The notes beneath the pieces are model-generated. The model did no database searches. It saw nothing but the letters and a program-made list of their open reading frames with translations, and was not told where the DNA came from. The translations under genes were made by a program, and so were the position numbers. This document shows, in pieces, positions 1,396 to 22,294 of a stretch of 64,000 nt of DNA. Within the stretch, counting starts at the first letter, position 1. The number at the start of each line of letters is the position of its first letter. The DNA is from Octopus sinensis (lineage: Eukaryota): positions 33,170,001 through 33,234,000 of the forward strand of contig NC_043010.1 of NCBI RefSeq assembly GCF_006345805.1, given 5' to 3'.

Positions 1396-1608
1396 TAAAT
1401 ATTTAATACATACATCACATAGTTACACTGGACATTCTGGAGCCTGTACTTTGTTCTTTCAGAGTTGACCATCTGTTATAAATTTAAACTACATGATTAA
1501 CTAAACAAATGGTAGTTATTGTACAAAGCCACAATAGGTTCAGACATAACTGTGTGATTAAGAAGTTTTACTTCACAACCATTTGACTTTTGGGTACAGA
1601 CCCACTGA

Positions 1609-1650
<42 letters not shown>

Positions 1651-1749
1651 AATTAAATTAGAGATAAAACCACTATTAGGTTTTATCTCTTTAATTTATA
1701 TTTATACTGTAAAATTAGATTTAATCCTAAATCTAATTTTTCCCTGTAA

Positions 1750-2022
<273 letters not shown>

Positions 2023-4792
2023 TGTTTAATCAGATGAATTTACAGCTGGGATTTTACTATTACCCCACCTCCACCCCACACCCTTTCAAAAATGGAGGAT
2101 TGAGAAGAGGAAGAAGAAACTACCAAAACACTTATTGTCAGCTAAAATAACAAACATTTTATTGTTTGTTTATTGTGTTCCACCCCCTTGGCTTCAGTAT
2201 GTGGAAAGTCTCATTTCTACCTTTATCATCACCACTATGTGCTGGCCTCCTAAACAGCACAATTTAAACAAGCGTTAAGTTCTCCATGAACCAACACAAT
2301 TCTAGACCTATTAGTTTTTTTTTTATTATTTCCAGTCCCCCTCCACCTCCAAACTAGTTAAAATTCTTTAAATCAAACCTAAACTTATTCCTCATACTTC
2401 TGTTTTTTTAATCTTCTATGTTATTTTTTTAACCACCTTTTTTTTTCCAATTTAAATCTAAAATTAATTAGTTATTTTGTTTATTTATTCATTAAAAAAG
2501 TTTTTGCAGTTACCCAAACAAGCCTTTAATCGTAGTTATTTTGTCACTATTGATAAATTAACAAGACTGCTAGTTTTTTGGTTTTTACTTTTTTTTTTCT
2601 GTCATACAAATCTTTTAAATTCACAACTATACTTATGTCCCATTAACAGTGCAGTGGGTTTTTTTTATATATATACACACATTTTTAAAACAACTATTCA
2701 TTTTCTTTAAATTTACCTCAAGTATAGATGTGGAAATCAATTTATTTGTGGGACAATGAAGAAAAGCATTAAAAAAATAAAATGAGAAAAAAGCCAAATG
2801 TCTTATTGTTCTTCTGTAGATGCATTAAATGTTAATTATAATTTATAGAATTTGACAGTGTAAGAAACATTGCTGTCTTTTTTTTTTTTTAAGCAATTAC
2901 ATTTATAAATACTTTTATCCTAGAAGACTCCAACCATTATGGCTTTCTTCTGCATACATCAAACCAATATCCCTATGCAGCCAAAACACTATTTAATATG
3001 TTGGTTTTGTGTGTGATTTTCATGCAAACAAAAATAGTTTTGCATTAGGCAACTTTTCTTAATAACTTCTATACAGATTTGTACAAAAATATCCCTTTTG
3101 ATTTCATTTTCAGATCATACAATGTACACATTTTATAGAAACTGAATTCTTTAATGTCATTCTTGATGCAACAGACCCCCACTTTATTACAGGATTAAAA
3201 TACTATTAAGTCAAATTACACAAAACAATTAAACATTTAGAAAAAGTTACACATTTGTTTCTAAAAGTGTAGTGTAACTGAAATTGCCCTAATAAGAAAT
3301 TCTAAATTAGAAATTTCCTTAAGATTAACACCTTCACCTCTAGATGAACAGGATGCTGAAGGCTGGTAGTAAATGGATATGAAAAATTTAGAACAAGCAT
3401 GTGTTTTTTACCAAGAACTAGCAACATAAGTAATCTTGGTTTGTGGAGAACTTCAACTGTTGCACTAATTACAACAATAATGATGCTTTATTAATTGTTT
3501 ATTTTAATAAATACAGAATTTTTTTAACAAATGAGAACAAAGAAAATATCACAGTGAGTGGGAATGCAGTGGTTTTGGTTGTTTTTTTTTCAGAAATTTT
3601 TCAATTCAAGATATCTGTAAATAGAAATAATCTATTTATTAAACTAATTTTAACTTTATTCTTGCTGAATTTAAACATTCTTGTGGAATGGACAAATCTC
3701 ATTTCAGAATTATTTTAATTCCACCATTTTATTTTTTATTTTTATGTCTTGCATCCTTCTTATATCCAACTAATAATGGCCTTGTCTAGCTGAAAATTAT
3801 TATACAAATAGATTAAAGACTGCAGCCGACTAGGGTGGTGGTAGTGGCAGGTTACTGATCTGAACTCTCAATCAAGTGGAAACAGTTGATTTATTCATGT
3901 TGTGGGTTGGACACTTGTAACAATGCATTCATTTGCAAACATTACAACAAAATTATTGTAATATTTCTGAGATTATCCTTTTAACACTTTTTCTTTTTTT
4001 ACATTGGTTTGCCTGATTAAAAATAATTTTTGAGGGTGGGAGGTATTTAAATATATAACACCATGTTTGTGTCACTGCCAGCTTCATATTGCTGTTACTA
4101 GTTTTTCTTTTTCATTTTGTAATAAATCTTGATGACTATTGTCACGTTTTCCATGTGAGGGACAGCATCCTATTATCAAGCAAACATCTTGGGATAAAGA
4201 AAATGTATATGAACAGTTATGCATACTGATAGTACATCCTTGCTTCCCTGCTCTTAATATATACATAAATGGAGATAGGGATGAAACCTAACCATTCGGT
4301 TTGCCAACTTATGCATTGCTGCTCAGCACCAGGTCTGGCTCTTGTGATACTATTTTATCTCAGACAACTACTGAATGATAGACTGTAAATGTTTTAGCAT
4401 ACTGTATTACTGAGATATAGCCTAGAACTTTTTCCTCTTGCCACTTGTAATAGCTGCTTGTTTTCATCATTTTGTTGCAGAATACATGAAACAATTCTCA
4501 TGTAAAATACAAAAAATTCTACCTTGAGATAGCAACTATAGAAAATGTTACAAAGATGATAATGTCGAGTAATTTTTCTTTCCCCAACCCCTTTTTTTTT
4601 AATAAGGTGTTTGTGTTTGCTCCTCTGCCCCCAACTAGATGTGCACCTTCTTTGTTTTCAAAAAGATAAATGAAAGCACAAGGTGTGTTGGCTGTTCAGC
4701 TTTCCAAGAACTGAAACAAATGGAGTGCAACTGCCTGTTTTTTTGCCTAGAGAGCAGAGAGATAATGAAATAGCAACAGTCCAGTAAATCAG

Positions 4793-4901
4793 CTATTGGA
4801 AATTTTTGCTGAAGTGGTAGTTGAGGGATTGAAATTGCCTTCTCCAAACCAACATGAGGAGACAAGTGTTCTGATGTTCATATAATAGGTATGTCATAAG
4901 G
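4793..4901 (-). CDS. PEMT-like gene, exon 7 (terminal): (N)LMTYLLYEHQNTCLLMLVWRRQFQSLNYHFSKNFQ*
   Basis: Acceptor ttttactttactag|, phase 2 matching exon 6. LMTYLLY aligns to PEMT PFTAEIY with T and Y conserved. An alternative phase-2 acceptor exists at 4746. Confidence 0.7.
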
Positions 4902-5050
4902 CTAGTAAAGTAAAACAAATGATTCTATCCAAAAATGAAGTCTTGGTCAGGTCTTAAATCTAGGCTTAACTACTTTCCATCAGTGTACCACTTTTACTTA
5001 ATAAGAAGTAATGTTAAATTTTAAATCTTCACAAACTGAGATATACTTAC

Positions 5051-5125
5051 TTTCTAATGTGCATTATCTCAATGTAACTGAAGCCAAGGAACAAGGTAAC
5101 TAACACTCCAGCTTGGCTGGCATAT
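5051..5125 (-). CDS. PEMT-like gene, exon 6: (I)YASQAGVLVTLFLGFSYIEIMHIR(N)
   Basis: ttcttttattacag| ... agaaa|gtaagt; 75 nt, phase 2-2, the same size as recalled human PEMT exon 6 (HASPTGLLLTVLVALTYIVALLYEE). Confidence 0.9.
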
Positions 5126-6904
5126 CTGTAATAAAAGAATTCATTATTTTTTTTCCTCATGTGATCCAAAGCGTGTTGGTTTATTTTATTTATATCAAAT
5201 TTCAAATAGTCTGTACTATGCATTATCTGCTTACACTTAATAATTTGTACTATGCATTATCTACTTACTTTCAATGTCTATTTGTTTTCTTAGAATTTGG
5301 GTGCAAATTATTTCCCTTCTGACTTGTTTCAATAAAAAAAAAAAATTCAGACCTTGCTCAATTTTCATAAAAGCCTGGAAGTCTCTTGTTATGGCTTACA
5401 ATAAACAGAACGTTGGTTACTTGATTTTTTTTTTTTTTATCTCTCTTTCCACTTTCTTTGGATTATATGCAGCAACAGTAAATGTTCACAATAGGAAATA
5501 CCTAGAGAAGGATGATTTCTCTACAAGGATTCCATTGAATAGCTCTGAAAATTATCACTATCAACAACATAAAATCAACCAGTTTCATAGTACTCTTTAA
5601 TTCACTCAGTACCACCAATTGTCTTCCTTGCTGCAGTTCTGTTGAAGGCAAAGATAATGCTTATATATGATTGATTGATTCTAGTTTCAGCTCACAAGCT
5701 GTGGCCATGCTGGGACACCGCCATATGTTTAGTATTGAAAACAAATTCCAAAACTTTGTGACAAATATGATACAGGAGAACCACAATGAGTGGGAAAAGA
5801 TCAAACTCATTCTTGCCTGATGAAATTTTGCTTACATAAGACATTATCAGGCCTGCAGCCTAGTGTTTAATGTAGGTTTCTAAGTCTGGTACTTGTTCTA
5901 CTGGCCTTTTTTGCAGGACAGCTAAGTTACAGATATTAACAAATCGGTACCAGTTGTCAAGAAGTGGACAAACACAAAGCCATATATATACACACACACA
6001 CACACAACATACAATTAGTGTCTACATAGTTTCCATCTATCAAATTCAATCACAAAGTTGCAAAGCAAACTTCTTAATCACAACCATTGTTTCTTCAACA
6101 TTTGAAGCCTTCAGGAAATGATTTATATGGTTTGAAAATGTGCACACATTTTCAAAATTAATTATTAGTGGAATACTTATAAAACAATTTCTGAAATTAC
6201 TTACTATACTGTATTCCCATAAACTGAAAGCATGAACAACTGAATTGTTGGTACTTCACAGTACCCCATAAACAGACCACAAATTACTAAACTGATAGTA
6301 GCGGTCAACAACTAGTGGTGCAATATGACACTGTTGAGTCTAACCACAATATTTCTAAAATTAGGTCAAACTCAAAAATCCCCAAAATTGGTGATGGTGT
6401 GCATCAATTTACTTCCCTGCATCAACTCTTTCTCTGTCAGACAAAGAATAAGGGTTTGAAACATCACAATTCTTCATTCCTCAAGGTAACTTATAGATAC
6501 CATTCCTTACAGTTTGCTAGCAGTCCTGAGTTCAATATTTATTGTGGGTAAAGCCTGCAGACAGATGGTTTCTTTCAAATTGATTTTTCTTTCCTATAGA
6601 TACACCACATGAAGATCAGAGATGTGGGGTTCATTAGTTTCATATTTAATACAATATAAAGATTCTAACATTTTTTACTAGAGGGAGCCAAAATAGTTGC
6701 AGTTTCGATGATAGGAAAAAAACTGACAAACCTATTACAACTGAGCAGATTGAGAATATCTGGCAGGTGATTGAAACTATGAACTATTCACTCAGTGTTC
6801 TGCTAGCCTACCATGCAGTTACTCTACTCCAGAAGTAGGAAGGACAAAGTTGACTTCAGCTAGATTTAAATAAATCTAATGCAATACTCTGTTGTTGTTT
6901 TCAA

Positions 6905-7105
6905 CCCTTTAGCAGCCAAATTGGCTATATCAGCGAAGTATTCTACCTGTTTTATGTTCAAACTGGCTTCTTACACCAACCCTACAATATCATTCTAAAA
7001 ATTAACAGCTACCTCAGCAAAATAGAAGATAATGCATAATTAATTCAAAATAGTGTGAATAAATAAGCAGTACATTTGACAGTAATCTGAATGCTAAAGA
7101 GTTAA
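6905..7105. mobile_element. MITE with CCCTTTAGCA...TGCTAAAG(A/G)G TIRs and T(T/C)AA flanks (piggyBac-like); copies at about 27845-28060 and 61716-62242
   Basis: Three similar copies of about 200 bp (the third interrupted by a CR1 fragment) with terminal inverted repeats aaccctttagca / tgctaaagggtt. Confidence 0.75.
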
Positions 7106-7432
7106 ATGACTTGAGAAAAGGCATTAACCATGATCCTTTTACAGGATTGCTCAGAGTAGACACCTTGTCTGAATGCTTGCAACAGAATGAATTTCATTAA
7201 AGGCATCCAAGAGCCTGTAGATAGTATTAAAGTGGGTAACATATTTGTTAACTACAATGCAGTGTTTTCCCAAGTGTCCCACCAGCTAGATATGGATGTG
7301 TGAAATATATATTTGTTATATTCATTTACCAAGGACTCTGCAAGTGAACTGATACCACTCCAGCAATAATTCAAACTCTACACTGTCCACAAAAATACAT
7401 TCTAGAAGAGATAGTTAAAATATTGAACTTAC

Positions 7433-7553
7433 ATTAATGATGCTCCTAAATACAAGAGACTATTTCCCAAAAACAATGTTGATTCAATACTAAGTAAACT
7501 GGCACAAGTTGGGAATCCTGGAGATGTTTTAGTGGCAGTTTTACTGGAAGGGT
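7433..7553 (-). CDS. PEMT-like gene, exon 5: (D)PSSKTATKTSPGFPTCASLLSIESTLFLGNSLLYLGASL(I)
   Basis: ttttttgttgatttcag| ... ttaat|gtaagt; 121 nt, phase 1-2. GFP and FLGNSLLYLGASL align to PEMT VFP and YWGSTANYLGWAI. Confidence 0.85.
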
Positions 7554-8769
7554 CTGAAATCAACAAAAAATATGTAAAAGGTATATTTTTAAAAAGCATC
7601 CTAAATAAATACAGTATTAAAGTGAGAGCGACATCTCAGAGAGCCATCCCTGTTGCACAATGGAAATCTTCATGCTCATGTCCTTGAAAAACATGAACAC
7701 TACAAAATCTCATATTCCTTTAACCTTATAAATCAGAGCAGTACTATAATAGAACCATGATGAATTGAACATAATAATACTGTGGTATGAGAGTAGCTGT
7801 GGGTAAGGAAATAAGGTGTGCAGAACAATACAGTAATTGAGTAAAAGTACATTACGGGAGCAAGACCTGAATTAATGAACGTAGAGAAGGCTGAAAAAAA
7901 GTGAGAATGGTTTGGTGAGAGAGAAGGGAAAGCAAACGATGACTTAGAAAAATAAAAGAGGACTAGTAGTGGATGTGAAAAGAAATGAGATGGCAAGGTC
8001 ATGTATTGAAAAAGGACAAAAGTGAATGAGTGAGAGAAATGATGAAAATGAATGAGGAAGGGTGAGAAGAGTGACAAAGTAAAAGATGGAGGAGACGAGA
8101 GTAAGGTAGGTTGTAAAGGATATGGTAAAATAGAGAAGACTGCTTTAGCAGAGAAATGGCTTTAAATTACTGTGGTACAGTAAATTAAGTATACTGAATG
8201 TTGTTATAATATGTGAAATTGAACAGAACATTATAATATGGACACCAGAAAAGTAAGCTGCAGATTACAGGAAGACAGTGCAGTGATTGAAACTGTAGTC
8301 TGCTGATTTAGAGTGTCATGTAAAATCCTGTTGGAATTCACTTTTCATCCCTCTGAGGTCAATAGGAATAAGAAGTAACAGTGATATAAGAATGGATCTT
8401 AGTCAGAACTTCAGGCCAGTAGAATTCAGTTATTTGATAAACTGAAGCTTAGTGTGTAAGTGGCTTAATATTCCAGACAGAAACAGCACTAGGTTGGGCA
8501 GATGCCATCCATCTGATGAGCTGCCATGCAGTTTCCATTTCCTCAGTTTTACTCATAATACATGGGTCAATGAGAGGTTAAAGTAAAAAGACACCTGTTC
8601 AAGATGCCATGCACTGAGATTGAACCTAGTATTTTATTACTAAGAAATGAACTTCCTAAACTATTCAGCTATACTGCTTCTAAACCAGTTATATACTGGA
8701 GTAAATCCAATCAACTGTTTCTAAATAAAATATTGATCGGCAACAGAAATTAATATTTTAAGCAGGATC

Positions 8770-8976
8770 ATAGACACACTCTAGCTTCTGACCCACTGGT
8801 ATGCTGTCTCTGCTCTGTTTTTTCCATTGCACCAATAGTGGCCTCTGTTCCCAGAGCTGGTTGGTTTCATACCACCACCAATCAGACACTCCTAACCCGC
8901 TAATCTCTCCACTTCTTATCATCCTTGCCCCCAGCACTATAATAAACACTACCCCCAGTCCTTCCTCCCCATAACA
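8770..8976 (-). mobile_element. Possible solo LTR remnant related to the Gypsy LTR at 20502
   Basis: Minus strand starts TGTTATG...GAAGGACTGG like the 20502 LTR and shares a (CAG/CTGA)TTGGTGGTGG motif; similarity is patchy. Confidence 0.3.
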
Positions 8977-9304
8977 TCATTTCTCTGGAACCTTCTCATT
9001 GCTCATGTTTGTCCTGCTGCTGCTGTTGACCTGAAACAGTTTAAACAGAAAATTTACAGTATCAAGCTTATCAGTCTCAGAGGGCCTGCAAAGGCCATGG
9101 AGCATGCCCTCTTCCTCCAAATTTACTAATTAAAAGAAATAGAAGCAATGTTTCATGTCCCGTTGTCTTCTATTTTAACTGAAACCAGTAAATTATTAAA
9201 TGCATCAATTTAATCATCTAACCTAAAGAAGACTGTCTTGCTGTTACATTAACCCTCTCTTATATGACAAGTGTAAGTTTTTAGAAAAGATATAGTTTTC
9301 TTAC

Positions 9305-9450
9305 CTTTCAAAATATGAGATATTTCCAAAGACTTAATTCCATGGTGAATATGACAGACTCCAATCAAGATGAAGAAATATCCAGTAAGAAGAAACATAT
9401 TTGACTGAAGAAAACTCCAGTGAGGTTGGTCAGCAATCAATTTCAAGAAC
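9305..9450 (-). CDS. PEMT-like gene, exon 4: FLKLIADQPHWSFLQSNMFLLTGYFFILIGVCHIHHGIKSLEISHILK
   Basis: ctaattgatag| ... gaaag|gtaaga; 146 nt, phase 2-1, the same size as recalled human PEMT exon 4. Ungapped alignment conserves F, QP, L, G93, G100-V and L111. Confidence 0.9.
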
Positions 9451-9696
9451 CTATCAATTAGAAGAAATAATAATGAATATGACTGAAGCTTTCAGTACTC
9501 ACAAGAAATAATAAATGGCATTCATCTTTGGAGTTAGAAAATATTACAACTCCCAACAGTTGTTAACTCACAACAAGGATCAAGTGAGACACTCAATGGA
9601 ATATTATTGCCCCATCTAGAGCTAAACATGAGTGCCCTAGACCATATAAAAAGATAGACTAGTAGACTGATTGCTATAAAATTACTAACTTATAAG

Positions 9697-10000
9697 TGCA
9701 GGCATGACTGTGTGGTAAGAAGCTTGCTTCCAAACCACATGGTTCAAGGTTCAGTCCCACTGCATGGAACTTTGGGCAAGTGTCTTCTACTATAGACTCA
9801 GGCTAACCAAAGCTTTGTTAGTGAATTTGGTAGAAGGAAATTGAAAGAGGTTCATCATATATATGCATATATATATACGTCTGTGTGTGTGTGTCTTTGT
9901 ATCTGTCTGTCCCCCACAACTGACAATTGGTGGTGGTGTATTTATGTCCCTGTAACTTAGCAGTTCGCCGAAAGAGAACAATAGAATAAGTGCCAGGTTT
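9697..10000 (+). mobile_element. tRNA-derived SINE, family A (copies at about 26150, 36895, 59648 and 63585)
   Basis: GACTGTGTGGTAAGAAGCTTGCTTCCAAACCACATGGTTCAAGGTTCAGTCCCACTGC head, repeated several times in the window. Confidence 0.85.
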
Positions 10001-10259
10001 TTAAAAAAAGTGGTGCTGCTAATATTAAACAGACCTCATGAAACATGTGTAGAAGAGAAATTTGGAACTTATATAGTAAGTATTAAAATAAAATTCTATG
10101 ATATGGTGTGATGTATATTAGGATTTGATGAATTGCATGGGGACTTCTATCTCTAAATAACATATATATATGTAAGTATGATAATTGCTTCAGTCTTAAT
10201 AGTTTCACTATATATATATTATATACATAGTGAAACTATTAAAACTGTAAATATTATCT

Positions 10260-10480
10260 CATTACAATAGAGATGTTATTCTTTCATTTTTAACACATAA
10301 TACTGAAATAGTCTAAGGGATAAGAAATTGCTCCAGGCTCGCATCAGGCAAGAAGTTGAAAATTGTTTTGGTTCATAACACTGCATAGACCCTAAATAAG
10401 GCATGCGTAAAATTTAAATGAAATCAGTTGTGTAACTCAAGAGTTTTAGTGATGCACAGACAGAGTCTCAGTTTTATACA
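10260..10480. repeat. Dispersed repeat of about 200 bp; second copy at about 48060-48235
   Basis: Shared CACATAATACTGAAATAG...GGCTCGCAT(C/T)AGGCAAGAAGTTGAA...AAGGCATG(C/T)GTAAAATT blocks. Confidence 0.7.
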
Positions 10481-10942
10481 TATAGATTATGTTTGCATAG
10501 CAAAGTACCACATACCTACAAATCATTAATGTTTACATACCAGCCCCTAGGAATGCATCTAATATGTAAATTGGTATACCCAATAACTTAACTCTGCTGT
10601 TTGCGATGGCTATATAAGCAATGTGTTCAGAGACAATAGTGTGTTGGATAAGTGCTGAAGAAGAGTAACAACTCCCTGAAATACAGTATATACACTCGTT
10701 ACCCATTTTTGTCTTTGATCACATTGTTTGTTTACATCTGATGTCTCGATACGAAATGTAGTAAAAGCAGTGTTGGCTATAGATACAATAGAATATCTGT
10801 AGAAATAACCTTAACAAAATATTACCATATTTTTTTAGCAGCCACACAATCACATCCTCTCAAAACAACCTTTAATACATTAACATCTTACTAGCACTCA
10901 ACTTATTTCATAAGAGAATTTTGTAAAAAAAGCTTAAGTTAC

Positions 10943-11043
10943 CCAACAAACGATGGTACAAGAAGTACAGCTGTGGCCAATGCATAAATCAGATCACCTT
11001 GATGGCTATTTTTCAATTTTTTCTTCAAAAATATTGTACACAC
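10943..11043 (-). CDS. PEMT-like gene, exon 3: VCTIFLKKKLKNSHQGDLIYALATAVLLVPSFV(G)
   Basis: ttttttttttttag| ... gttgg|gtaact; 101 nt, phase 0-2. YALATAVLLV aligns to PEMT YSLSVTILLL. Confidence 0.88.
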
Positions 11044-13426
11044 CTAAAAAAAAAAATATAATATCTGTAAATTTTTCATCATTATCATTCATTTAAGTCC
11101 ATTTTTTCAAAAACACCTACAAGGTTTCCATATATTATTTATGAGGACTTATTTTATAGTTTAATTTTAACTCCTGAGAACTATATAGTTGCATGATCTG
11201 CTAGAAATAGTAGCCAAATGTCATTCAAATCATATCCTACTGTCTTTAAAAACAAACTGAATAGTCACAGCAAGTCTGCTCTGTTAAGACTGACCTGAAG
11301 CTGAACAACAATAACATACTTCTTTTAAATTCTAGAGCACATTCTTTGATCCTTCATCTACCTAAGCTTCTCCAGAATTAACTTTCATCTTTCTTTTGTA
11401 ATTATCTCATACAAGATTTTTCAAAATTTTTTCCAATTTCCATGTAGCTCCTCTTGCAATGCAATGTTATCAGTTGTACCATTTCATCTCCCATTACACT
11501 GTTGGAAAAACTATTCAAAGTATTGTTGTGATAGGTAAACATGTTCCTTGGTTTGTTGTAGCTATCACAGCTAAGGCTGTACTGAAGCACTGTCTTTAAA
11601 ATATGGCTATTTATTGTATTTTATTAACACTCATTTATTTTATAACAATCATAATAATCACACATTTTTCAGGAGCAAAACAGTTCCTTACTTCAAATAT
11701 GTTAACACAAACCTAACTAACTAAATAACTTTCTGGCAAGCTACTGGCCTATTTGAATTATTTCTCTTAGCTCATCTTTTCAATTATGCAAGTTAATTAT
11801 TACCATGCATGAATCAGATGATCACAACTGTCTTGAGTAAATTATACTATGCTAAAGAGGTCCAATAACACTGAAACATGTCTTCCCCTGGCTTATTTGA
11901 GTTATTATTTCTCTTAGCTCATTTTATTTTCTGTTTTTCTTTGATATATTTCTGGTGTGTCAAGGCTAAAGAAACAACTGAATAATTCAAGACTATGCCT
12001 CTAGTATAAGTTCCAACTGCTATTTTTTATACCAAGAGTTAAACCTTGTTGTTATTTGGTCTATATATCACTTCAGTGTAACATTCTACAAAACACAAAT
12101 ACAACCTACACTGGAGAAGTGCTCACGTATCACGAACAGAGCTGATGCTACACACACACACAAACATCCTCAAATGCATACAAAATAAAAACCTGGTTAA
12201 TTGACAAAGACTCCCATACCAATCTGGTATAACCATAAACCACATACTATTAACACGCATCATCAACATCATCATCATTTTAACATCCACTTTTCCATGC
12301 TTGCATAGGTCTGATGGAATTTGTCAAGACAAATTTTCTATGACTCGATGCCTTTCCTGTTGCCAACCCTCACTTGTTTCCAGAAAGTGATATTTCCTAT
12401 GGTCAGATATATTTTTCACAGAGAAGTAGAGAGATGAATAACACCACTTGCTTTCTGAACTATCATCTATCTATTTTCAAGTAGTCATCTCAATTTTGTT
12501 TCTCCGTTATTAAACAATAATCCCAGTACTCCCTTCCTAATATTGCAGACCCTGAAACTCACTCCCTACCAACATCTTCCCAGCTCACAGGTGAAGCTGA
12601 ACATCAAAAGTACCCTTGTCAGAGAACCTGTAGAGATCAAAGAAACTCATCTGTTTTCCTCTAACTAAATAGTAAATAAAACCCACTTCAAATGACAGTG
12701 AGCAGTAACAATGAAACTCCTGGTAAATTGCATTATTATAAGTAAATGGCTTTCCATCAGTTTCAACAATGAAGATTCAGTTGTTCAATCAAGTGGACAA
12801 CCTGCTTATTGAATTAGCATGAAAGTGGATGAGTATTCCACAGGCACATGTACCATTAACATAATTCTCAGCATGACTGTACAGATACAGTCCATTCAAC
12901 AGGCTTTCACATAGCTTCTGTCAACCCTATTGAACTCACAAGGCTTGAATCAATTCAAGACAATGGTAAAAGACACTTAAGGTGTTGTATAGTGGGATTG
13001 AACCCAGCATTTCATCATTATGAAGCAAACTTCTCGACTATTCAGTTATGCTCTCTCCACATACTACATATAAAGTAATATCAATAAACTGAACTCCAGT
13101 GGACTTGAAAGATACATTTTTCATCTTGTACGTTTGTGTAAGTGAAAGTTTTCAGAGAAATTTCAGTTTCCTTTCCTACCTTCTCTGTGTCATTCCAATT
13201 TTATTCAGAGAAGATGATCCCAGTCACAAACAATTATGTATAAACCTACTTTTATTTCTGAGAGAATATCACATAATTTTAAACTAATATTACAAAAGGA
13301 AAATAACTTGAAATAGAATGATCAAGCATAAAAAGAAATTCAGAAATTGGTTAGTATATAAAAGTGTGTGTTATTTAATCTTAAAAGTCAAACAAGAGAG
13401 ATTATAATATTTGGATTAAAACATAC

Positions 13427-13537
13427 CATCAGCCACAAAGGAAGAATAACTAAGATGATGCATAACAGTATCCAAAGCTTGGTATCAGACCACCTAATCT
13501 GAGAGTCAGGGAAGAAGAAATCAGGAAATAATTCCAC
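13427..13537 (-). CDS. PEMT-like gene, exon 2: VELFPDFFFPDSQIRWSDTKLWILLCIILVILPLWLM
   Basis: ttttattttag| ... gatg|gtatgt; 111 nt, phase 0-0; hydrophobic TM1 preceded by I.WSD. Confidence 0.88.
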
Positions 13538-13654
13538 CTAAAATAAAATTTTTAAATCATGAATTAAAAGAAATTTTTTTAAAATTACTTTTCTCTGAAA
13601 ATACTGATATAATTTTTACACATTGTGTGTGTGTGTGTGTTTCTGTAATTCATC

Positions 13655-14525
13655 ATTGTCAAGATCCTTTAACTGATGCAGCCAGTTGTTGGAGTGTCAC
13701 TCTAGACACTTTCATAGTCAGCCATTGCCACTGGTCTCTGTTCTGTCATGCATAACAGGTTCACAGTGCTGTGAACAGTCCAGTCCCTTGATGGTGCCAA
13801 ACCAGAATTTTCTCAGCCTGCTTCTCTTTCGCTTTCCCTCAAGTTGTAGCAGGATACATGACCATGATAGGTAAGCTTCTATCTTTTTACCTGCAGAAGG
13901 AGTGGTTCCTGTCTACCAGCATACTTGTTGGCTTGCTGCCTGATAAAGCTGTTCATTTTGTGCTCTGTATATGGGATGTGCAATAGCCTTCTGAAATACT
14001 TGTGCTCAAATATCTGGATACTTTGTCAGCTATAAGAGTACAGCTTTCACATCCATACAGAAGGACTGAAGTCACTAGGGTCTTGTGCAACTCTGAGTCT
14101 TGTTGGAAAACTAATGAAACTGCTTTTCCATATATTGTTCAGCTTTGTTGTGACAGTAGAGACTAAGCTGAGTCTTGTTGTTATCTCCCTTTGAGATACT
14201 CCAATTCTTCAGAAAAAAGTCAGAGGCAATGTACATACTTAAACATAGGAAATTCCCTGGAGTGGATAACATCCCATCAGAGCTAAAACATGGAGGGCCA
14301 AAGCTTATCAAGGCACTAACAGTTGCCTGTCAGAAGATATGAGAGAAAGCAATAGCCAAAGGAGTGGACCCACTGATGATATTCATTCCCAAAAAAGGCA
14401 ACTTAAGACTCTGTAAGAATTATAGAACCATCAGCCTAATTAGTCCCCCAGCAAAGTATTGTTAAGAGGCCTGATAAACAGACTTAAGGGGAATGCAGAA
14501 GAAATCTTTGACCAAAGACAGCAGA
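13655..14525 (-). mobile_element. RTE-type LINE remnant with an inverted 5' segment
   Basis: About 13655-14325 on minus has RTE C-terminal motifs (LVTSVLLYGCESCTL). About 14335-14525 on plus has IFIPKKGNLRLCKNYRTISLIS (RT N-terminal). Confidence 0.75.
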
Positions 14526-14757
14526 TCTCAAAAGGAGGTGTCTGTAATTAGAGATATGTAAACATAGAAATTATTTCTATATAAATCTAGTAAGCTTTTG
14601 AGAAAATCTTTTCCAAAATTTTATTAAACCGAAAATCTTAATAATCCCTTCGTAAATTTGTTATATTTTACAACAAAGAGATATAAGATCTGTACATAAA
14701 TATGGTATGCTGTGCATGTCAATGGATATATTTAGAATTTATGTAAAGAAGCAGTTT

Positions 14758-15178
14758 GGATCTTTTCAGTTTGAACGGTAGTTTTTTCTAGTGGTGTCAT
14801 ATGAAATTGTCACCCATAATTATAACCCTAGTATCGATCGATTGCATTTCAATTTGGGTTAGGGTTAGTTAGGGTTAGAGGTGGGGGGACGGGTATCTTT
14901 GTTTCTTCACAAATGTAAATAAACCCAATCTGTTTCTTAAACGAGGGACATATTCATACGGCACAGAATGTTTTTTACCTCAATAGACGTCATTGATTGG
15001 TTGAAATCGCAGAAATTGAAGAAAAAAAACAACAAATATCTTACAAACTATAGAATTTTCTCAATAAAGCCAAGAGAAAAAGATGTTTTATAAACACATT
15101 CTACCAGTATACCAAATTTAAAATGTTTTAGTTACCTAGAAATTATGTTAAAAACTGCCGTTCAAACCGAAAAGAGAC
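14758..15178. mobile_element. Non-autonomous element with GGATCTTTTC(A/G)GTTTGAACGG inverted ends and an internal TTAGGG-like tract; partial inverted copy at 23119-23345
   Basis: Ends are GGATCTTTTCAGTTTGAACGGTAGTTTT and AAAACTGCCGTTCAAACCGAAAAGA; GGGTTAGGGTTAGTTAGGGTTAG at about 14857-14880. Confidence 0.8.
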
Positions 15179-15239
15179 ACTAAATTACGTTATAAGATAC
15201 AAAACAGTGTTTCAAAGTTTAGTACGATGCCAGCAGTTT

Positions 15240-15415
15240 TAGGGGAAGGGGATACCACACAGTACTTAACTAGTATTTTATTTTATTGAACCCTATAGGA
15301 TAAAATGTAAAGTTGAAGTCGGTGGGATTTGAACTCAGAACGTAAAGAACCGAAAGAAATGCCGCGTAGCATTTTGCCAAACGTGCTAACGATTCTGCCA
15401 GAGAGCCATTAACCA
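15240..15415 (-). mobile_element. tRNA-derived SINE, family B (copies at about 22700-22895 -, 39690-39875 -, 53124-53320 +, 60965-61180 +)
   Basis: CTGGCAGAATCGTTAGCACG...AAATGC...TTACGTTCTGAGTTCAAAT head, repeated in the window. Confidence 0.85.
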
Positions 15416-16134
15416 AATAGGAAACATGAATGGTAGTGTCTCTGAGATATATTTGGCAAGTTAGAAGAAAACTGCTGTGGGTGAGAATCTGGAAAGTAAA
15501 TCCTTCTCAAAATTTGAAGTAAGGCTGTGAGCTTTATTTCAGTGAGGTGGCAGTTAATCAAGGGCCCCGGATTTATTCCAGCTAAATTCCACTGTTATAT
15601 GTCCTGGGTGAAAGGGGTGATGTCAATCAACTCCGATATGGATTGCTACTGACAAGCTGTTTATTCGATACCACTCAAAAAACAAAGCAAGAGCGCTCTA
15701 GCCGTGACCACCTTGTCTCTTTTATATATCAGGAACTACATGATCCAATGTGTCCGGGGTTTTTCTTTCTTTCTTTCTTTTGAGACTGTAGTGGTTGATT
15801 CGAAGATCATTTGGTTGCAATTTTTCGTAGATGCACAGATTCCCTTGATCATTCGTTTCTGGTAAATTTATCAACCAAGTTTAGATTGAACATGAACTAA
15901 GAATCTAGCGAGACTTAACTAAAGTACTGTAAGACTTGAAATATGACGCTCTACAGAGTCAGCTACCTTATACTGCCCTGTAAAGAGAATTTTGCACATA
16001 TCCCTTCACATTGACAGAAGAAACATAAATAAAGGAATTTCTGTCATCATTTTCTTTATGCTTCAATGAATAAATCTCATGATGCTAGTAGAAAAACAAA
16101 CTGTCGCTGAATATAATGAAATATTTTAAGTTAC

Positions 16135-16215
16135 CTTGCTGAAGTCTATCATTGTGTTTTCACCGCAACAACCGTAAAAGAGATATGATGGAAAAGAGAC
16201 GTCCGCAGACGCCAT
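16135..16215 (-). CDS. PEMT-like gene, exon 1: MASADVSFPSYLFYGCCGENTMIDFSK
   Basis: ATG in a CpG-enriched segment; donor agcaag|gtaact, phase 0. GCCGENTMIDFSK matches the recalled human long-isoform PEMT N-terminus DCCGGLGNIDFRQ, with the intron at the same place. The seven exons join to 744 nt, 247 aa, with no internal stop. Confidence 0.88.
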
Positions 16216-16339
16216 AACTGTCGAGCCTCGTTTTAGATACACAGAAGTTTGTTTTGTTTTTTAAATCGGACATAAGGGTTCGATTTCTACTAGAACACAT
16301 TTTTTTTAAATTTATATTCATGACATCATGGTAAAGGCA

Positions 16340-16625
16340 TGAGACTAACGATTGGGGTGTACAGTTTACAATTATATGCTTGTGAGGTTAATTCCTGGAC
16401 AGATTGACACTCTGTCTTTGAGCAAAGCACTTTCCTGATTGCTCGTTGCTCCAGTCCCGATGTAAACGAACACCAACCGGTTGCTAATACAGTCCTCTTT
16501 CCCTTTAGCTATCACATCATTGATGTTCCACTGAGTGAAAGGGGATGGGTCGTGAGGGTATTCGTTTCTGCTCACGACTGCATAAACGATTAGCAAGCTA
16601 TACCCGTTTATAAGTGACACCTGGC
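16340..16625 (+). mobile_element. Decayed SINE immediately upstream of the PEMT-like first exon
   Basis: TTGAGCAAAGCACTTT...CGTTGCTCCAGTC core typical of these tRNA-derived SINEs. Confidence 0.6.
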
Positions 16626-17189
16626 TGTACTATAACTCCGTGACATTACGATTTCTAAGAAAATTATAGATTATTATGTCTACTGCAGTGTACGTCAAAA
16701 CTATAATGAGAAATATTTATACAGTGAAGAAATTATACATTATTAGTCCTATGGCTCATAGTTTAATCAGTAGACTAGGATGGGAAACAACTCTAGATAG
16801 GTATCGGCCTTATTGTGTCTCCTCATCAACATAAATTTCACCAGACTTACCAGGATAGTAATGAGAGAATCACCAAATTGGTTTAAATAATATATTGGTA
16901 ACTGAGCTTGTATCTTTTCTTCACCACATAAATATTTCTAACTAGATTCTTAATGCTTAAACCATTGTTTGTCGTTTGGATGGCATTTCTCAGTAATTAA
17001 TCTCCATCATTATTCTTTAATATACATTTTTATGTCTGTTCACCATCTCACATGTATGGAAACATAAACACAGTTTATACAGACCCAATCATATAAGGTG
17101 CTTTGCTTCACACTTTTAAATACTCACAATGGAAGAATGCCAATTTCACCACATTGTCTACAATGTGTTATTACTTAAACATTAAACCA

Positions 17190-20100
17190 TCTTTTCGGGA
17201 GAATTGCCAGACTTGCGGGATACAGGGATGACACATTGGAACAAACAGTTAAATTAGCATTTGTGACAGGATTTCCTGACCACGTGTCAGTCGAACTACA
17301 AAAGCTGCCAAATATTCACTCCATGGCAATAGGAGAGGTAACATCTCAGTCCAGAGTCATCATCTCGTGTTGCAAGATGACACCTTTGGCAGCGACTGCA
17401 ACAAAAGGTCAAACAAAGAGTGGCAGAGAGGGGTCAAACAAAGAACATGTGTAACCCTTCAAAGGGCAGTGTTTTCGGTGTCAGGGTTCGCACATGGTGA
17501 GAGACTGCAAAGAACCCAGGCCTGGAGTAATTTGCTATCGATGCAGATAAACAGGCCGCATCATTAGTGAATGCGTTCAGGGAAACGGTCTAAGGGAGAC
17601 TACTGTACCAGTAGTCGTCCCGTCGAAAGAATAAAGCATGTATACAGTCGTTGCCAGTAATAGATGTTGTGGTGGACAGAAAGATATCACTAGCCCTCAT
17701 GGACATGGACTGCTCAACAACCCTAATGAATCTGGAGGTGGTAGAAGAATGGAATGGACTGAGTAGTGTAAGGGTTGTTGATGATACAGAAGTTGAATGC
17801 AGAGGAAGGAGCGATGTGGAGATGGTGGTACAAGGGATGAGATTAAGGGCGCACACGATCATGATTGACCGCATAGTGGACGGAATCGATGTGGTGATGG
17901 GGATGGACGCCATTGTCCATTTGGGAGGTGTCACGGTCAATGAAGCTGGTGTAACGTACAGTGATGCGGGGGCACTATGCACCGTGAGTCCATAATGGGA
18001 GAGTGGGGAGAGCTGTGAAGAAAAATATGCTGCATACACCATTGCAGACAAGAATTTGGGGGCTGTGTTCAATAGCCGGCAGTGGACAGTGGAATGGTAC
18101 TGGGAGGGAGATCCTCCGACATTGAAGCATACCCTGAAAAGTGATGCCAAAAGCGAGTCCGAGGGAGTGGTGGAAAGGTGGATCAAAGAAGGCAGTCTGA
18201 TCCCTTGGAAGGAGGAAGCAGAGAGTGGACTGCTACCACTGATGGCAGTGGTGCAGCCGAAGAAACATAAAGTCAGGCCAGTATTAGATTTCCAAGAGCT
18301 GAACAACCACGTATTGTGCTATATGGGCGGCAAAGCCACGGACATTTGCAGTGAAACCTTGAGAGAGTGGAAGCAGATGACAGGGGCCTCCACAATCGTC
18401 AATTTGAAGTCGGCATATGTGCAGCTGCATGTGGCTGCGAGACTGTGGAAATATCAGCTAGTAAGGTGTAAGAGTCGGACATACTGCTTGACCAGGTTGG
18501 GATTCGGGCTAAATTCAGCACCAAAGATTATGGCGACAATTCTCAAAACCATCCTGGGAAAGGTGGACAAGGTGAAAAGAGCCACCAATTCCTATATTGA
18601 TGACATCCTGGTGGACGGGAGCATAGTGTCGGCAAAGGAGGTCATAAGCCACCTGAAGAGTTTTGGGCTAACTGTCAAACTGCCAGAGGCAATGGAAGGA
18701 GAAGCTACACTGGGACTCAAGGTATGGAGAGACAAGGCCAGCGCATTAGTGTTTCAGAGAGGGAATGAGATCCCAGAACTGGGTTCCAAGATGAGTAGGT
18801 GAGAACAGTTTTCTGTGTGTGGGAAGCTGCTGGGGCACTACTCAATTGCAGGATGGCTCCAGACTGCATGCAGATTTATCAAGAGGTGAACTGAAGGAGT
18901 GAGGTGGAGTGACAATGTGGCTGAAAAAACAACTGCCATGATGCAAGAAGTCTTGGAGAGAGTGACGGCGGAGGACCCAATAGGAGGAAACTGGTATGTG
19001 CCCCAATTGAAGAATGGGATCGTGTGGTGTGATGCCAGCAGCATAGCAACAGGTGTTGTCCTGGAAATTGGAGGCATCATGGTGGAGGATGCAGCCTGGC
19101 TCAGGAAGTAGGACGACTGCAACCACATCAACGTGCTGGAGCTGGATACCATGTTGAAGGGGCTAAACCTGGCCCTGAGGTGGAGGATGCATACCATCGA
19201 GATCTGGACTGATTTGGCCACTGTACTTAGATTGGTGGGATCAAAGGTCACTGGCGAGGAGAGGATGCGAACCAAAGGAGGCACAGAGATACTGATAAGA
19301 TGCCATTTGGGAATTTGGGAGTGAGCTAGCTGCCAATTTTGACCCAAGGCTGAGTGTGGTTTTTGTGCCCTCTGAGAGGAAAAGAGCAGACATCCTGACC
19401 AGATTAAAGAAAGCCTGGTTGCAGGTGCCGGAGGATCTGGAGCAAGAAGTGGATTCAGTGTGTTGACTGAGTGACTCAGTGCATACCATGCATCACATGG
19501 GAGTGGACAGGACCCTGATACTAGCCAGGAAAGTTGACTCTGCACACTCTGACTAGGCAAAGTGTGCTGAGAGTAGTTGGGAGTTGTGACAGGTGCCAGT
19601 CCACTGACCCTACTCCAGGTGTACATGAGGTAGGAAGCATTCCAGTTGAACACAACTGGAAATGAGTGGCAGTGGACGTGATGCACTACCAGTAGGGAAC
19701 ATACCTCTCAATGGTCGACTGCAGATCGGGGCAGTTGGCCATATGGAGAGAAATGAAGATGGGAACTTTAGAAGAAATCACAAGAATACTAAATGAGATA
19801 TTCCTAGAACAAGGCCCTGTGGATGAGTCACTTATGGACAATGGCACTGCATTTTGCTTAGAGGTGTTGGGGGAAATGCTCAACAAGTAGCATGTTAGCC
19901 ATTTCTTCAAGGCAACATACCGGCCAAGTGGCATCAACACACCATCAAGACTATAGCAGAGAGAGGTCACATCTCACTGGTCGAGTCTGTTTTTTGGTAA
20001 AATATGTTGCCCAGGACGGGACAGGCTGAGGAGTCAGTGTCACACAGGGCAATATTCAAGTATGAATAGAGACATCCATGTACTGCATTGCTGTAACCCA

Positions 20101-21384: not shown

Positions 21385-21436
<52 letters not shown>

Positions 21437-21443
<7 letters not shown>

Positions 21444-22219: not shown

Positions 22220-22246
22220 TGATGATGATGATGGTGATGGTGATGG

Positions 22247-22281
<35 letters not shown>

Positions 22282-22288
22282 GTGATGA
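22220..22288. repeat. (GAT/GGT)n microsatellite at the end of a family C repeat
   Basis: Visible directly. Confidence 0.95.
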
Positions 22289-22294
22289 TTTTCC

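What the first reader, a model, noticed from the sequence alone, without database searches (positions are those of the whole stretch)
4793..16215. Intact 7-exon PEMT homologue that has lost the PEMT catalytic/SAM-binding motifs (candidate pseudoenzyme or neofunctionalised lipid enzyme)
Seen in sequence: seven GT-AG exons (81, 111, 101, 146, 121, 75 and 109 nt; phases 0, 0, 2, 1, 2, 2) join into a stop-free 247-aa multi-pass membrane ORF, none of it evident from the ORF track. Knowledge (recalled human PEMT): same intron phases, identical 146- and 75-nt exons, and matching anchors CCG..IDF, QP, G100-V, FP, G...YLG, .AS..G and T...Y. The invariant family motifs are replaced: NPLYWN..ARWE becomes ILPLWL..CTIF, G98 becomes L, LGFAGTFLGDYFGI becomes LEISHILKDPSSKT, NPMYWG becomes STLFLG, and the di-acidic E180-E181-P (implicated in SAM binding) becomes R-N-L. 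Inference: a frame and all splice sites preserved across 11 kb of TE-rich introns suggest purifying selection on a protein that probably no longer methylates phosphatidylethanolamine. It could be a regulatory partner of a canonical PEMT, a lipid-binding ER/MAM scaffold, or an enzyme with a new substrate.
Basis: partly seen in the sequence, partly recalled or inferred. Interest (0 to 1): 0.85.

Follow-up and report, generated by a model that had tools for sequence, protein, structure and literature searches.

The report
Divergent PEMT-like membrane gene in octopus
This is a real, spliced gene kept across octopus, argonaut and cuttlefish; it descends from the lipid enzyme PEMT but has replaced the charged residues and loop the enzyme is thought to need, so it probably does a different, unknown membrane job.

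Summary
The finding is largely right. The window matches Octopus sinensis chromosome CM016872.1. On the minus strand lies annotated gene LOC115219548 ("uncharacterized protein", no Pfam domain).

The seventh exon (4901-4793) is wrong. The true last exon is 25 nt at 3614-3590, outside the stated coordinates, so the protein is 219 aa, not 247.

The same 7-exon structure, and the same position relative to an Skp1_POZ-domain gene, hold in O. vulgaris, O. bimaculoides, Argonauta and Acanthosepion; PEX13 flanks the other side in O. vulgaris, O. sinensis and Argonauta. dN/dS is about 0.13.

PEMT homology is solid:
- A cephalopod profile finds genuine PEMTs in an exhaustive search (E 2e-8 to 3e-7).
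- hhalign gives 99.5% probability, E 2.5e-22.
- All five introns of a canonical annelid PEMT coincide in position and phase with introns 2-6 here, including the 146- and 75-nt exons.

Pfam's PEMT model does not detect the protein. R34, E36, the GDYFG loop and E180 are replaced; E180-E181 became an invariant R-K. Packing glycines and the QP and ASxxG motifs remain. G98-to-L is not diagnostic.

Loss of activity is inferred, not shown. I could not test whether octopus also has a canonical PEMT.

The parts
16135..16215 (-). Coding exon 1 (81 nt). It runs from the ATG to FSK and encodes the N-terminal CCG..IDFS motif.
   Evidence: Exact spliced reconstruction of P0001. The CCG..ID.S motif is also present in lamprey PEMT P0012.
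13427..13537 (-). Coding exon 2 (111 nt). It encodes W.D..LW and TM1, with LPLW in place of NPLYW. The following intron is phase 0.
10943..11043 (-). Coding exon 3 (101 nt). It starts with VCTIF in place of V(A/G)RWEH and encodes TM2.
9305..9450 (-). Coding exon 4 (146 nt). It encodes QPHW, TM3 with G121 and G128, and C130-H131. Exons of the same 146-nt length occur in canonical Owenia PEMT and in the snail homologue.
7433..7553 (-). Coding exon 5 (121 nt). It encodes a variable loop that replaces GDYFG, then FP, ESTLFLG (in place of DNPMYWG) and YLG.
   Evidence: AlphaFold2 confidence (pLDDT) is below 50 for residues 150-164.
5051..5125 (-). Coding exon 6 (75 nt). It encodes YASQAG...SYIEIMHIR, which is TM5. 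The 75-nt length is shared with Owenia PEMT, the snail homologue and the Owenia paralogue. Isoform X2 skips this exon.
3590..3614 (-). True last coding exon (25 nt including the TGA stop). It encodes (K)YLELKNF*.
   Evidence: The C-terminus is conserved in all cephalopod orthologues.

Best explanation
The locus is a real, expressed, seven-exon gene: Octopus sinensis LOC115219548, with orthologues in O. vulgaris, O. bimaculoides, Argonauta hians, Acanthosepion pharaonis and another decapodiform. It encodes a 219-aa multi-pass membrane protein that is a deeply diverged member of the PEMT family (phosphatidylethanolamine N-methyltransferase, Pfam PF04191).

Shown:
- Homology to PEMT along the whole length, and shared intron positions.
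- The helix-packing scaffold is kept: Q78-P, G93, G100, G145, YLG152, A158-S159, G162 (human numbering), plus the N-terminal CCG..IDFS motif.
- Every conserved charged residue of canonical PEMTs is replaced (R34, E36, R67, D120, E180), as is the G-D-Y-F-G loop. E180-E181 is an invariant R211-K212.
- The gene is under purifying selection. The segment homologous to the cofactor-binding C-terminal hairpin is the most conserved part.

Inferred: it no longer binds AdoMet or methylates PE. It acts as a non-catalytic ER-type membrane protein, a pseudoenzyme. It may keep a lipid-headgroup or partner-binding surface built on the old TM4-TM5 pocket. Nurim is a comparable case: an ICMT-family member with no demonstrated methyltransferase activity.
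For: Gene reality:
- A 100% match to annotated proteins.
- A unique exact spliced solution, with the same exon plan, in five genomes.
- Conserved neighbours: Skp1_POZ in all five genomes, PEX13 in O. vulgaris, O. sinensis and Argonauta.
- A spliced 934-bp transcript contig from a decapodiform.
- dN/dS of 0.126-0.154 over long distances.
- Between Octopus species, exons are 1.8% diverged against about 8% for introns.

Homology:
- hmmsearch of 1.84 billion representatives returns, outside cephalopods, proteins nearly all of which carry a PEMT Pfam signal (13 of 14 full-length hits; 9 at or above the 25-bit cut-off); E is 2e-8 to 4e-4.
- hhalign gives 99.5%, E 2.5e-22.
- 5 of 5 introns of canonical Owenia PEMT, and 6 of 6 of the snail homologue, fall in the same alignment column and phase.

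Motif loss:
- Of 30 columns conserved in at least 6 of 7 canonical PEMTs, 13 are kept in all cephalopods (mostly Gly/Ala/Ser/Leu) and 12 are lost. The lost columns cluster in the RWEH, GDYFG and E180 blocks.
- The Pfam PEMT model scores the cephalopod proteins below significance: E 4.3 at best against a 25-bit cut-off. The recalled human PEMT used as a control scores 117.8 bits.
- The GDYFG-equivalent loop varies among cephalopods and is predicted disordered. That fits a decayed catalytic loop.

Established knowledge:
- Shields et al. 2003 (J Biol Chem 278:35826, cited in PMC8770322) assigned AdoMet binding to G98-x-G100 and E180-E181.
- Nurim as an inactive ICMT relative: PMC13137591.
Against: - No biochemical data exist.
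- The region homologous to the cofactor site (residues 166-219) is the best-conserved part of the protein: 32 of 54 residues are invariant. It carries new invariant polar residues (E170-S-T, E206, R211-K212, and C130-H131 in TM3). That could equally mean a remodelled but working active site.
- The Tyr of NPxY is retained in decapodiforms. The Pro of that motif is also missing in siboglinid PEMTs that still score over 70 bits.
- G100 is kept.
- The AlphaFold2 model (pLDDT 74) gave no informative Foldseek match, and I could not inspect its coordinates.
- The only close-range comparison (O. sinensis vs O. bimaculoides) gives a nominal omega of 1.35, from just 12 differences.
Confidence: 0.68

Rival explanations
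1. It is still an AdoMet-dependent membrane methyltransferase with a remodelled cofactor site. It may act on PE or, more likely, on a new lipid or small-molecule substrate (neofunctionalised enzyme).
For: - Strong purifying selection is concentrated on the C-terminal hairpin homologous to the cofactor pocket.
- New invariant polar residues are present: C130-H131, E170, E206, R211-K212.
- G100, YLG, AS..G and, in decapodiforms, the motif Tyr are kept.
Against: - All conserved acidic residues of canonical PEMTs are gone. That includes E180, which is reported as essential for AdoMet binding in human PEMT (Shields 2003, established knowledge).
- The GDYFG loop has decayed into a variable, low-confidence segment.
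- The Pfam model does not recognise the domain.
Confidence: 0.22
2. It is a decaying PEMT pseudogene or an annotation artefact with no protein-level function.
For: - The catalytic motifs are lost.
- The nominal omega is 1.35 between O. sinensis and O. bimaculoides, based on 2 synonymous and 10 non-synonymous differences.
Against: - The frame is open and all 12 splice sites are intact in five genomes that span octopods and decapodiforms.
- dN/dS is about 0.13 over long branches.
- 92 invariant residues were counted.
- A spliced transcript exists in a decapodiform.
- The 10 replacements between the Octopus species fall in the N-terminal tail and the variable loop.
Confidence: 0.02
3. The resemblance to PEMT is a chance or compositional similarity between hydrophobic proteins. 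The exon chain is one of many possible stop-free chains. This was my starting null hypothesis.
For: - tblastn of human PEMT against the window gives only noise, with the best E in the gene at 3.3.
- 60 alternative chains of the same lengths are stop-free.
- There is no Pfam hit.
- Pairwise BLASTP gives only 22 bits.
Against: - Database-wide significant profile hits go almost only to PEMT-family proteins.
- hhalign gives E 2.5e-22.
- Independently of composition, 5 of 5 intron positions and phases coincide, with identical 146- and 75-nt exons.
Confidence: 0.01
4. Question of origin, not function: the gene is an old spiralian PEMT paralogue that coexists with a canonical PEMT, rather than the cephalopod orthologue of PEMT itself.
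For: - The annelid Owenia fusiformis has both a canonical PEMT (P0009, 80 bits) and a divergent 188-aa paralogue (P0019, 15 bits).
- That paralogue sits on another scaffold and has the same 7-exon plan, the CC..IDFS N-terminus, no GDYFG and a short last exon.
Against: - Cephalopod proteins score no better against P0019 (38-39 bits) than against canonical PEMTs (46-55 bits).
- Their weak nearest non-cephalopod neighbours are a snail-like group: Bradybaena P0016, P0014 and P0020. This fits gradual divergence of the mollusc orthologue, but long-branch effects cannot be excluded.
- The Owenia loci show no shared neighbours with the cephalopod locus.
Confidence: 0.4

Closest known systems
PEMT / Opi3 family (Pfam PF04191; human PEMT, lamprey PEMT P0012, Owenia PEMT P0009)
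   Same: - The proteins are collinear over about 190 residues: N-terminal CCG..ID.S motif, W.D..LW, (N/L)P..W, QP.W, G93, G100, FP, ..Y.G, YLG, AS.(A/T)G and the Y173 equivalent.
- Length and number of helices are similar.
- All five introns of the annelid gene are shared in position and phase.
- The 146- and 75-nt exons are identical in length.
   Different: - It is not detected by the family HMM.
- R34-W-E36-H becomes T/S-I/L-F/S-L.
- GDYFG becomes a variable loop.
- The Pro of NPxY becomes Thr.
- E180-E181 becomes R-K.
- There is a 4-residue insertion after FP.
- The protein ends 8 residues after the EE position and lacks the PFT..IY tail.
Nurim (NRM), the ICMT-family nuclear-envelope protein with no demonstrated methyltransferase activity
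   Same: It is a member of the membrane-embedded methyltransferase superfamily that is conserved yet apparently non-catalytic (PMC13137591). It serves as the conceptual precedent for a membrane-methyltransferase pseudoenzyme.
   Different: It belongs to a different branch (ICMT-like, not PEMT-like). No sequence relationship to the octopus protein was tested or seen here. Nurim is widespread in animals, whereas this clade has so far been seen only in cephalopods.
Other divergent spiralian PEMT-like proteins (Bradybaena similaris BFZ25744.1 = P0016; Owenia CAH1789361.1 = P0019; Tubulanus LOC141910734 = P0011)
   Same: - They share the exon plan (snail 63, 96, 113, 146, 115, 75, 28; Owenia paralogue 48, 93, 98, 128, 85, 75, 40).
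- They have the CC N-terminal motif and weakened catalytic motifs.
- They are annotated as hypothetical or uncharacterised.
   Different: - Most still keep Glu at the E180 position; 6 of 8 divergent homologues do.
- Several keep HP.Y or part of GDYF.
- They score 15-51 bits on PF04191, whereas the cephalopod proteins score essentially nothing.

Membership tests
PEMT (Pfam PF04191, phospholipid methyltransferase) | Significant match to the curated family HMM (gathering score 25 bits) | tested here: not met
   No hit at E<=10 for Octopus P0001. One of five cephalopod members reaches only E 4.3. The control, recalled human PEMT, scores 117.8 bits.
PEMT (Pfam PF04191, phospholipid methyltransferase) | Statistically supported common ancestry with bona fide members (profile searches) | tested here: met
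   hmmsearch with the cephalopod profile hits proteins named PEMT that score 57-96 bits on PF04191, at E 2e-8 to 3e-7 over 1.84 billion sequences. hhalign gives 99.5%, E 2.5e-22.
PEMT (Pfam PF04191, phospholipid methyltransferase) | Shared gene structure (intron positions and phases) with canonical PEMT genes | tested here: met
   Owenia PEMT introns at alignment columns 121, 163, 213, 255 and 280, with phases 0, 2, 1, 2, 2, are identical to octopus introns 2-6. The 146- and 75-nt exons are shared. The human gene was not checked.
PEMT (Pfam PF04191, phospholipid methyltransferase) | AdoMet-binding G98-x-G100 motif (Shields et al. 2003) | tested here: inconclusive
   G100 is invariant (G128). 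G98 is Leu/Phe in cephalopods, but it is also Ser, Ala or Ile in canonical lamprey and annelid PEMTs. The first Gly therefore does not define the family.
PEMT (Pfam PF04191, phospholipid methyltransferase) | Acidic E180(-E181) motif needed for AdoMet binding | tested here: not met
   E180 is invariant in 7 of 7 canonical sequences and replaced by an invariant R211-K212 in all cephalopod orthologues.
PEMT (Pfam PF04191, phospholipid methyltransferase) | Conserved G-(D/E)-Y-F-G loop and (N/H/D)-P-x-Y-x-G motif; R-W-E-H after TM1 | tested here: not met
   GDYFG becomes KDPSS/TDRSS/KAYSV/KANSV. NPMYWG becomes STLFLG/STLYFG, with only Gly kept throughout and Tyr kept in decapodiforms. RWEH becomes TIFL/SLSL/SLFL.
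PEMT (Pfam PF04191, phospholipid methyltransferase) | Catalysis of PE to PC methylation with AdoMet | not testable with these tools
   This needs an enzyme assay or yeast complementation.
Membrane-methyltransferase pseudoenzymes (nurim-like concept) | Conserved family fold, loss of cofactor and catalytic residues, and purifying selection | tested here: met
   The scaffold columns are kept and the charged columns are lost. dN/dS is about 0.13. Absence of activity itself was not tested.

The most novel reading that the evidence does not exclude
Coleoid cephalopods, and perhaps molluscs generally, have turned the PEMT scaffold into a protein with a new conserved polar constellation: C130-H131 in TM3, E170-S-T, E206, and a charge-reversed R211-K212. 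This protein either performs new membrane chemistry or acts as a lipid sensor or regulator. It may be the only PEMT-family gene left in cephalopods. If so, cephalopods have lost de novo choline-headgroup synthesis by PE methylation while keeping and repurposing the protein.
Probability: 0.25. Interest if true: 0.7.

Novelty: new variant of a known kind. Interest (0 to 1): 0.5.

Why it matters
- It gives a family assignment to a conserved cephalopod "orphan" that databases list as uncharacterised with no domain.
- It is a clean natural example of a membrane-embedded methyltransferase scaffold kept under selection after its conserved charged residues were replaced. Membrane pseudoenzymes are much less documented than soluble ones.
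- It raises a testable question about phosphatidylcholine supply in cephalopods: do they still have a PE-methylation pathway?
- The series of progressively degenerate relatives (Tubulanus, snail, Owenia paralogue, cephalopods) could show which PEMT residues are structural and which are catalytic.

Tried and rejected
- I first treated the finding as a chance ORF chain. Sixty alternative stop-free GT-AG chains of the same lengths exist. tblastn of recalled human PEMT gave only noise. Pfam gave nothing. BLASTP gave 22 bits. I abandoned this null when the protein database returned the annotated orthologues.
- Profile searches against PDB sequences gave nothing useful, whether with the cephalopod profile, recalled human PEMT or the canonical PEMT profile. 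No solved PEMT turned up and ICMT was not reached, so I could not map the motifs onto a solved cofactor site.
- AlphaFold2 with only five cephalopod sequences was unusable (pLDDT 41.7). With 19 family members it reached pLDDT 74.4 and pTM 0.68, but Foldseek against PDB gave no significant match. The best family-related hit was steroid 5-alpha-reductase 7c83 at E 2.7.
- The word-indexed homologue searches with the cephalopod alignment and with the mixed alignment added almost nothing.
- The lamprey PEMT locus was too long to fetch and the Tubulanus gene was not on record.
- Literature searches found nothing on PEMT in octopus, cephalopods or molluscs, on PEMT pseudoenzymes, on the gene and protein accessions, or on the two SRA runs. 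Neither Shields 2003 nor the ICMT structure paper is held in the library.

Full report
**1. What is in the sequence**

The finding's interval starts with CTA and ends with CAT on the plus strand, so the gene reads on the minus strand.

I enumerated AG...GT-bounded segments of the stated lengths that keep a frame open from the ATG at 16215 to the stop at 4793. That gave 60 chains.
- 16215-16135
- 13537-13427
- 11043-10943
- 9450-9305
- 7553-7433
- 5125-5051
- 4901-4793

So the literal observation is in the sequence. A stop-free chain is not in itself beyond chance.

My first tests were negative:
- tblastn of human PEMT against the window gave noise. I recalled that sequence from memory and validated it at 117.8 bits on Pfam PF04191.
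- Pfam gave no PEMT hit for the 247-aa product.
- BLASTP gave 22 bits.

**2. It is a real gene, with a different last exon**

A search of the protein collection returned a 219-aa protein that is 100% identical over the first 211 residues. It is annotated in Octopus vulgaris and O. sinensis as LOC115219548, "uncharacterized protein", with no Pfam domain.

Orthologues were also returned:
- O. bimaculoides LOC106875363
- Argonauta hians, 73-75% identity
- Acanthosepion pharaonis, about 54% identity
- an unnamed decapodiform

All of them end in ...IRK.L..K.F. In the window this C-terminus is encoded by a 25-nt exon at 3614-3590, behind a good acceptor (tttctatttacag).

An exact spliced-alignment script finds one and only one exon chain that reproduces each protein in each genome:

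| Species | Exon lengths (nt) |
|---|---|
| Three Octopus species | 81, 111, 101, 146, 121, 75, 25 |
| Argonauta | 81, 108, 101, 146, 124, 75, 25 |
| Acanthosepion | 84, 108, 104, 146, 124, 75, 25 |

The window is identical to the part of O. sinensis GCA_006345805.1 CM016872.1 compared.

It is alignable only within the genus Octopus, at intron-like identity. It has no counterpart in Argonauta or Acanthosepion.

None of the seven exons overlaps a dispersed repeat. About 9% of the gene interval, all of it intronic, matches repeats elsewhere in the window.

**3. Selection, expression and context**

Nei-Gojobori dN/dS values:
- Octopus vs Argonauta: 0.126 (dS 1.09)
- O. bimaculoides vs Argonauta: 0.139
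- The two decapodiforms: 0.135

Between O. sinensis and O. bimaculoides there are only 12 coding differences, 2 synonymous and 10 non-synonymous, for a nominal omega of 1.35. Exons are 1.8% diverged against roughly 8% for the six introns. The ten replacements lie in the N-terminal tail and the variable loop.

The decapodiform orthologue sits as an uninterrupted ORF on a 934-bp contig assembled from run SRR27666080. That is a spliced mRNA.

The neighbours are conserved:
- PEX13 lies upstream and divergent in O. vulgaris, O. sinensis and Argonauta.
- A 120-aa Skp1_POZ protein gene lies downstream and convergent in Octopus and Argonauta.
- The Skp1_POZ neighbour is also present in Acanthosepion and O. 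bimaculoides.

**4. Is it a PEMT homologue?**

Yes, by three independent lines.

(a) *Exhaustive profile search.* I ran an hmmsearch with the five-sequence cephalopod profile over 1.84 billion representative proteins. It gave 16 hits at E <= 1e-3. Outside cephalopods, all but one of the full-length hits carry a PEMT Pfam signal:

| Protein | Source | E-value | PF04191 score |
|---|---|---|---|
| P0008 | Lamellibrachia PEMT | 1.9e-8 | 75.7 bits |
| P0009 | Owenia PEMT | 4.1e-8 | 80.4 bits |
| P0010 | unnamed | 1.0e-7 | 95.5 bits |
| P0012 | lamprey PEMT | 2.6e-7 | 90.6 bits |
| P0013 | Ridgeia PEMT | 1.2e-6 | 72.3 bits |

Weaker divergent relatives also appear: Tubulanus at 50.6 bits, the snail Bradybaena at 24.8 bits and an Owenia paralogue at 15.2 bits.

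(b) *Profile-profile comparison.* hhalign of the cephalopod alignment against seven canonical PEMTs gives probability 99.5% and E 2.5e-22 over 186 columns. The match runs from the N-terminal CCG..IDFS motif to TM5.

(c) *Gene structure.* This line is independent of amino-acid composition.
- The canonical Owenia PEMT gene has exons of 135, 116, 146, 112, 75 and 133 nt.
- The snail homologue has exons of 63, 96, 113, 146, 115, 75 and 28 nt.
- On a joint protein alignment, all five Owenia introns and all six snail introns fall in the same column, with the same phase, as the octopus introns.

I verified it on an annelid PEMT, not on the human gene.

**5. What has changed**

Thirty alignment columns are conserved in at least 6 of 7 canonical PEMTs. 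In the cephalopod proteins:
- 13 are kept in all four sequences. These include Q78, L84, G93, G100, L111, F133, G145, L151, G152, A158, S159 and G162. They are mostly small or packing residues.
- 5 are partly kept. These include G112, P134 and Y143, which is Tyr in decapodiforms and Phe in octopods.
- 12 are lost.

The losses cluster in three blocks:
- R34 and E36 of the RWEH block become T/S and F/S.
- G119, Y121, F122 and G123 of GDYFG are lost. The segment is variable among cephalopods, has pLDDT below 50, and is even alternatively spliced in Acanthosepion.
- E180 and Y188 become R211 and F219.

No conserved charged residue of canonical PEMT survives. By contrast, 6 of 8 other divergent homologues still have Glu at position 180.

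- G98 is Ser, Ala or Ile in canonical lamprey and annelid PEMTs, so G98-to-L is uninformative.
- The EE position reads R-K (invariant), followed by Y or N, not R-N-L.

Conservation within cephalopods is uneven:

| Region (residues) | Invariant residues |
|---|---|
| 166-219 (old cofactor hairpin) | 32 of 54 |
| 106-138 | 18 of 33 |
| 139-165 (loop) | 2 of 27 |

New invariant polar residues appear: H108, C130-H131, E170-S171-T172, E206 and R211-K212.

**6. Structure**

AlphaFold2 with the 19-member family alignment gives pLDDT 74.4 and pTM 0.68. The long helices are 46-73, 78-105, 115-138, 166-187 and 191-213. Foldseek against the PDB finds nothing significant. The sequence searches of the PDB found no solved PEMT and did not reach ICMT. 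I therefore could not map the motifs onto an experimentally defined cofactor site.

**7. Interpretation**

Shown:
- It is a conserved, spliced cephalopod gene under purifying selection.
- It is homologous to PEMT over its whole length.
- It retains the scaffold but lacks the conserved charged and loop motifs.

From established knowledge:
- Shields et al. 2003 assigned AdoMet binding in human PEMT to G98-x-G100 and E180-E181. PMC8770322 cites that paper when it uses the equivalent Cho2 G102A/G104A inactivating mutant.
- Nurim is an ICMT-family protein without demonstrated methyltransferase activity (PMC13137591).

Inferred: the cephalopod protein no longer methylates PE and works as a non-catalytic membrane protein. 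The strongly conserved TM4-TM5 hairpin may serve as a binding surface.

The main rival is a remodelled, still active methyltransferase with a new substrate. The new invariant polar residues and the strong constraint on the old cofactor region keep that rival alive. I give it about 0.2.

Pseudogene and chance explanations are excluded.

**8. Origin**

Owenia has both a canonical PEMT and a degenerate paralogue with the same seven-exon plan, so old paralogy is possible.

Pairwise scores place the cephalopod proteins no closer to that paralogue than to canonical PEMTs. Their weak nearest neighbours are a snail-like group. That fits a mollusc orthologue that diverged progressively, though long-branch artefacts cannot be ruled out.

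Whether Octopus also has a canonical PEMT is the key open fact.

**9. Novelty and score**

No paper in the searchable library mentions the gene or a PEMT pseudoenzyme. Databases list the protein as uncharacterised with no domain. I rate it a new variant of a known kind: a PEMT-family member with degenerate catalytic motifs.

The result is a solid remote-homology assignment with a plausible pseudoenzyme story. It is not a categorically new system. Interest: 0.5.

Noticed in passing
window 24023-~31186 and beyond (+): The PEX13 gene lies head-to-head with the PEMT-like gene. The ORF at 30695-31186 scores 155 bits on Peroxin-13_N. The annotated 379-aa PEX13 starts about 7.8 kb upstream of the PEMT-like ATG. 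The arrangement is conserved in Argonauta.
   Followed up: partly
window 1-2022 (+): This is the end of a 120-aa Skp1_POZ-domain gene, which I take by eye to be elongin-C-like. It is convergent with the 3' end of the PEMT-like gene and is a conserved neighbour in Octopus, Argonauta and Acanthosepion.
   Followed up: partly
window 3590-16215 compared with L009 (O. bimaculoides): Synonymous divergence in the CDS (2 differences in about 140 sites, 1.4%) is far below intron divergence (about 8%). About 11 synonymous changes would be expected at the intron rate. This could reflect constraint on synonymous sites (splicing signals, or RNA-editing structure in coleoids) or chance. It remains unexplained.
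   Followed up: partly
window 5051-5125 (-), exon 6: An in-frame exon-6-skipping isoform (X2, 194 aa) that removes the TM5 segment YASQAG...IRK is annotated in both O. sinensis and O. bimaculoides. Another isoform (X3, 189 aa) reads through the exon-5 donor.
   Followed up: no
L004 21299-21341 and 26032-26097 (Acanthosepion): Cuttlefish isoform P0006 replaces the first part of exon 5, the loop that corresponds to GDYFG, with an alternative 43-nt exon. That is further evidence this loop is unconstrained.
   Followed up: no
L007 (Owenia fusiformis CAIIXF020000007.1) 10001-22574: Owenia carries a second, degenerate PEMT-family gene (P0019, 188 aa; exons 48, 93, 98, 128, 85, 75, 40) in addition to canonical PEMT on another scaffold (L005). 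A 219-aa gene with no domain hit lies 4 kb downstream. It showed no tblastn similarity to the family.
   Followed up: partly
residues 16-26 of the product (window ~16170-16138, -): The N-terminal CCG..I(D/N)(F/M/L)S motif is conserved from lamprey PEMT to cephalopods, the snail, Tubulanus and several unnamed homologues. Its role is unknown to me; it might be a di-cysteine lipidation or targeting signal.
   Followed up: no
window 17590-20422: This is a GC-richer block (49% GC at 18-20 kb) with overlapping long ORFs on both strands. One of them (18056-18802, +) gives a sub-threshold reverse-transcriptase match (24 bits). It is probably a decayed retrotransposon in the PEX13/PEMT-like intergenic region.
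   Followed up: partly
window 55921-56478 (-), 46947-47474 (-), 33295-33687 (-): There are other mobile-element remnants. A reverse-transcriptase fragment scores 53.5 bits at 55.9-56.5 kb. A similar ORF at 46.9-47.5 kb gave no RT hit. A sub-threshold integrase-core fragment lies at 33.3-33.7 kb.
   Followed up: partly
intron 3: window 9451-10942 compared with L009 14816-23687: Intron 3 is 1.5 kb in O. sinensis but 8.9 kb in O. bimaculoides. This implies a large lineage-specific insertion or deletion.
   Followed up: no
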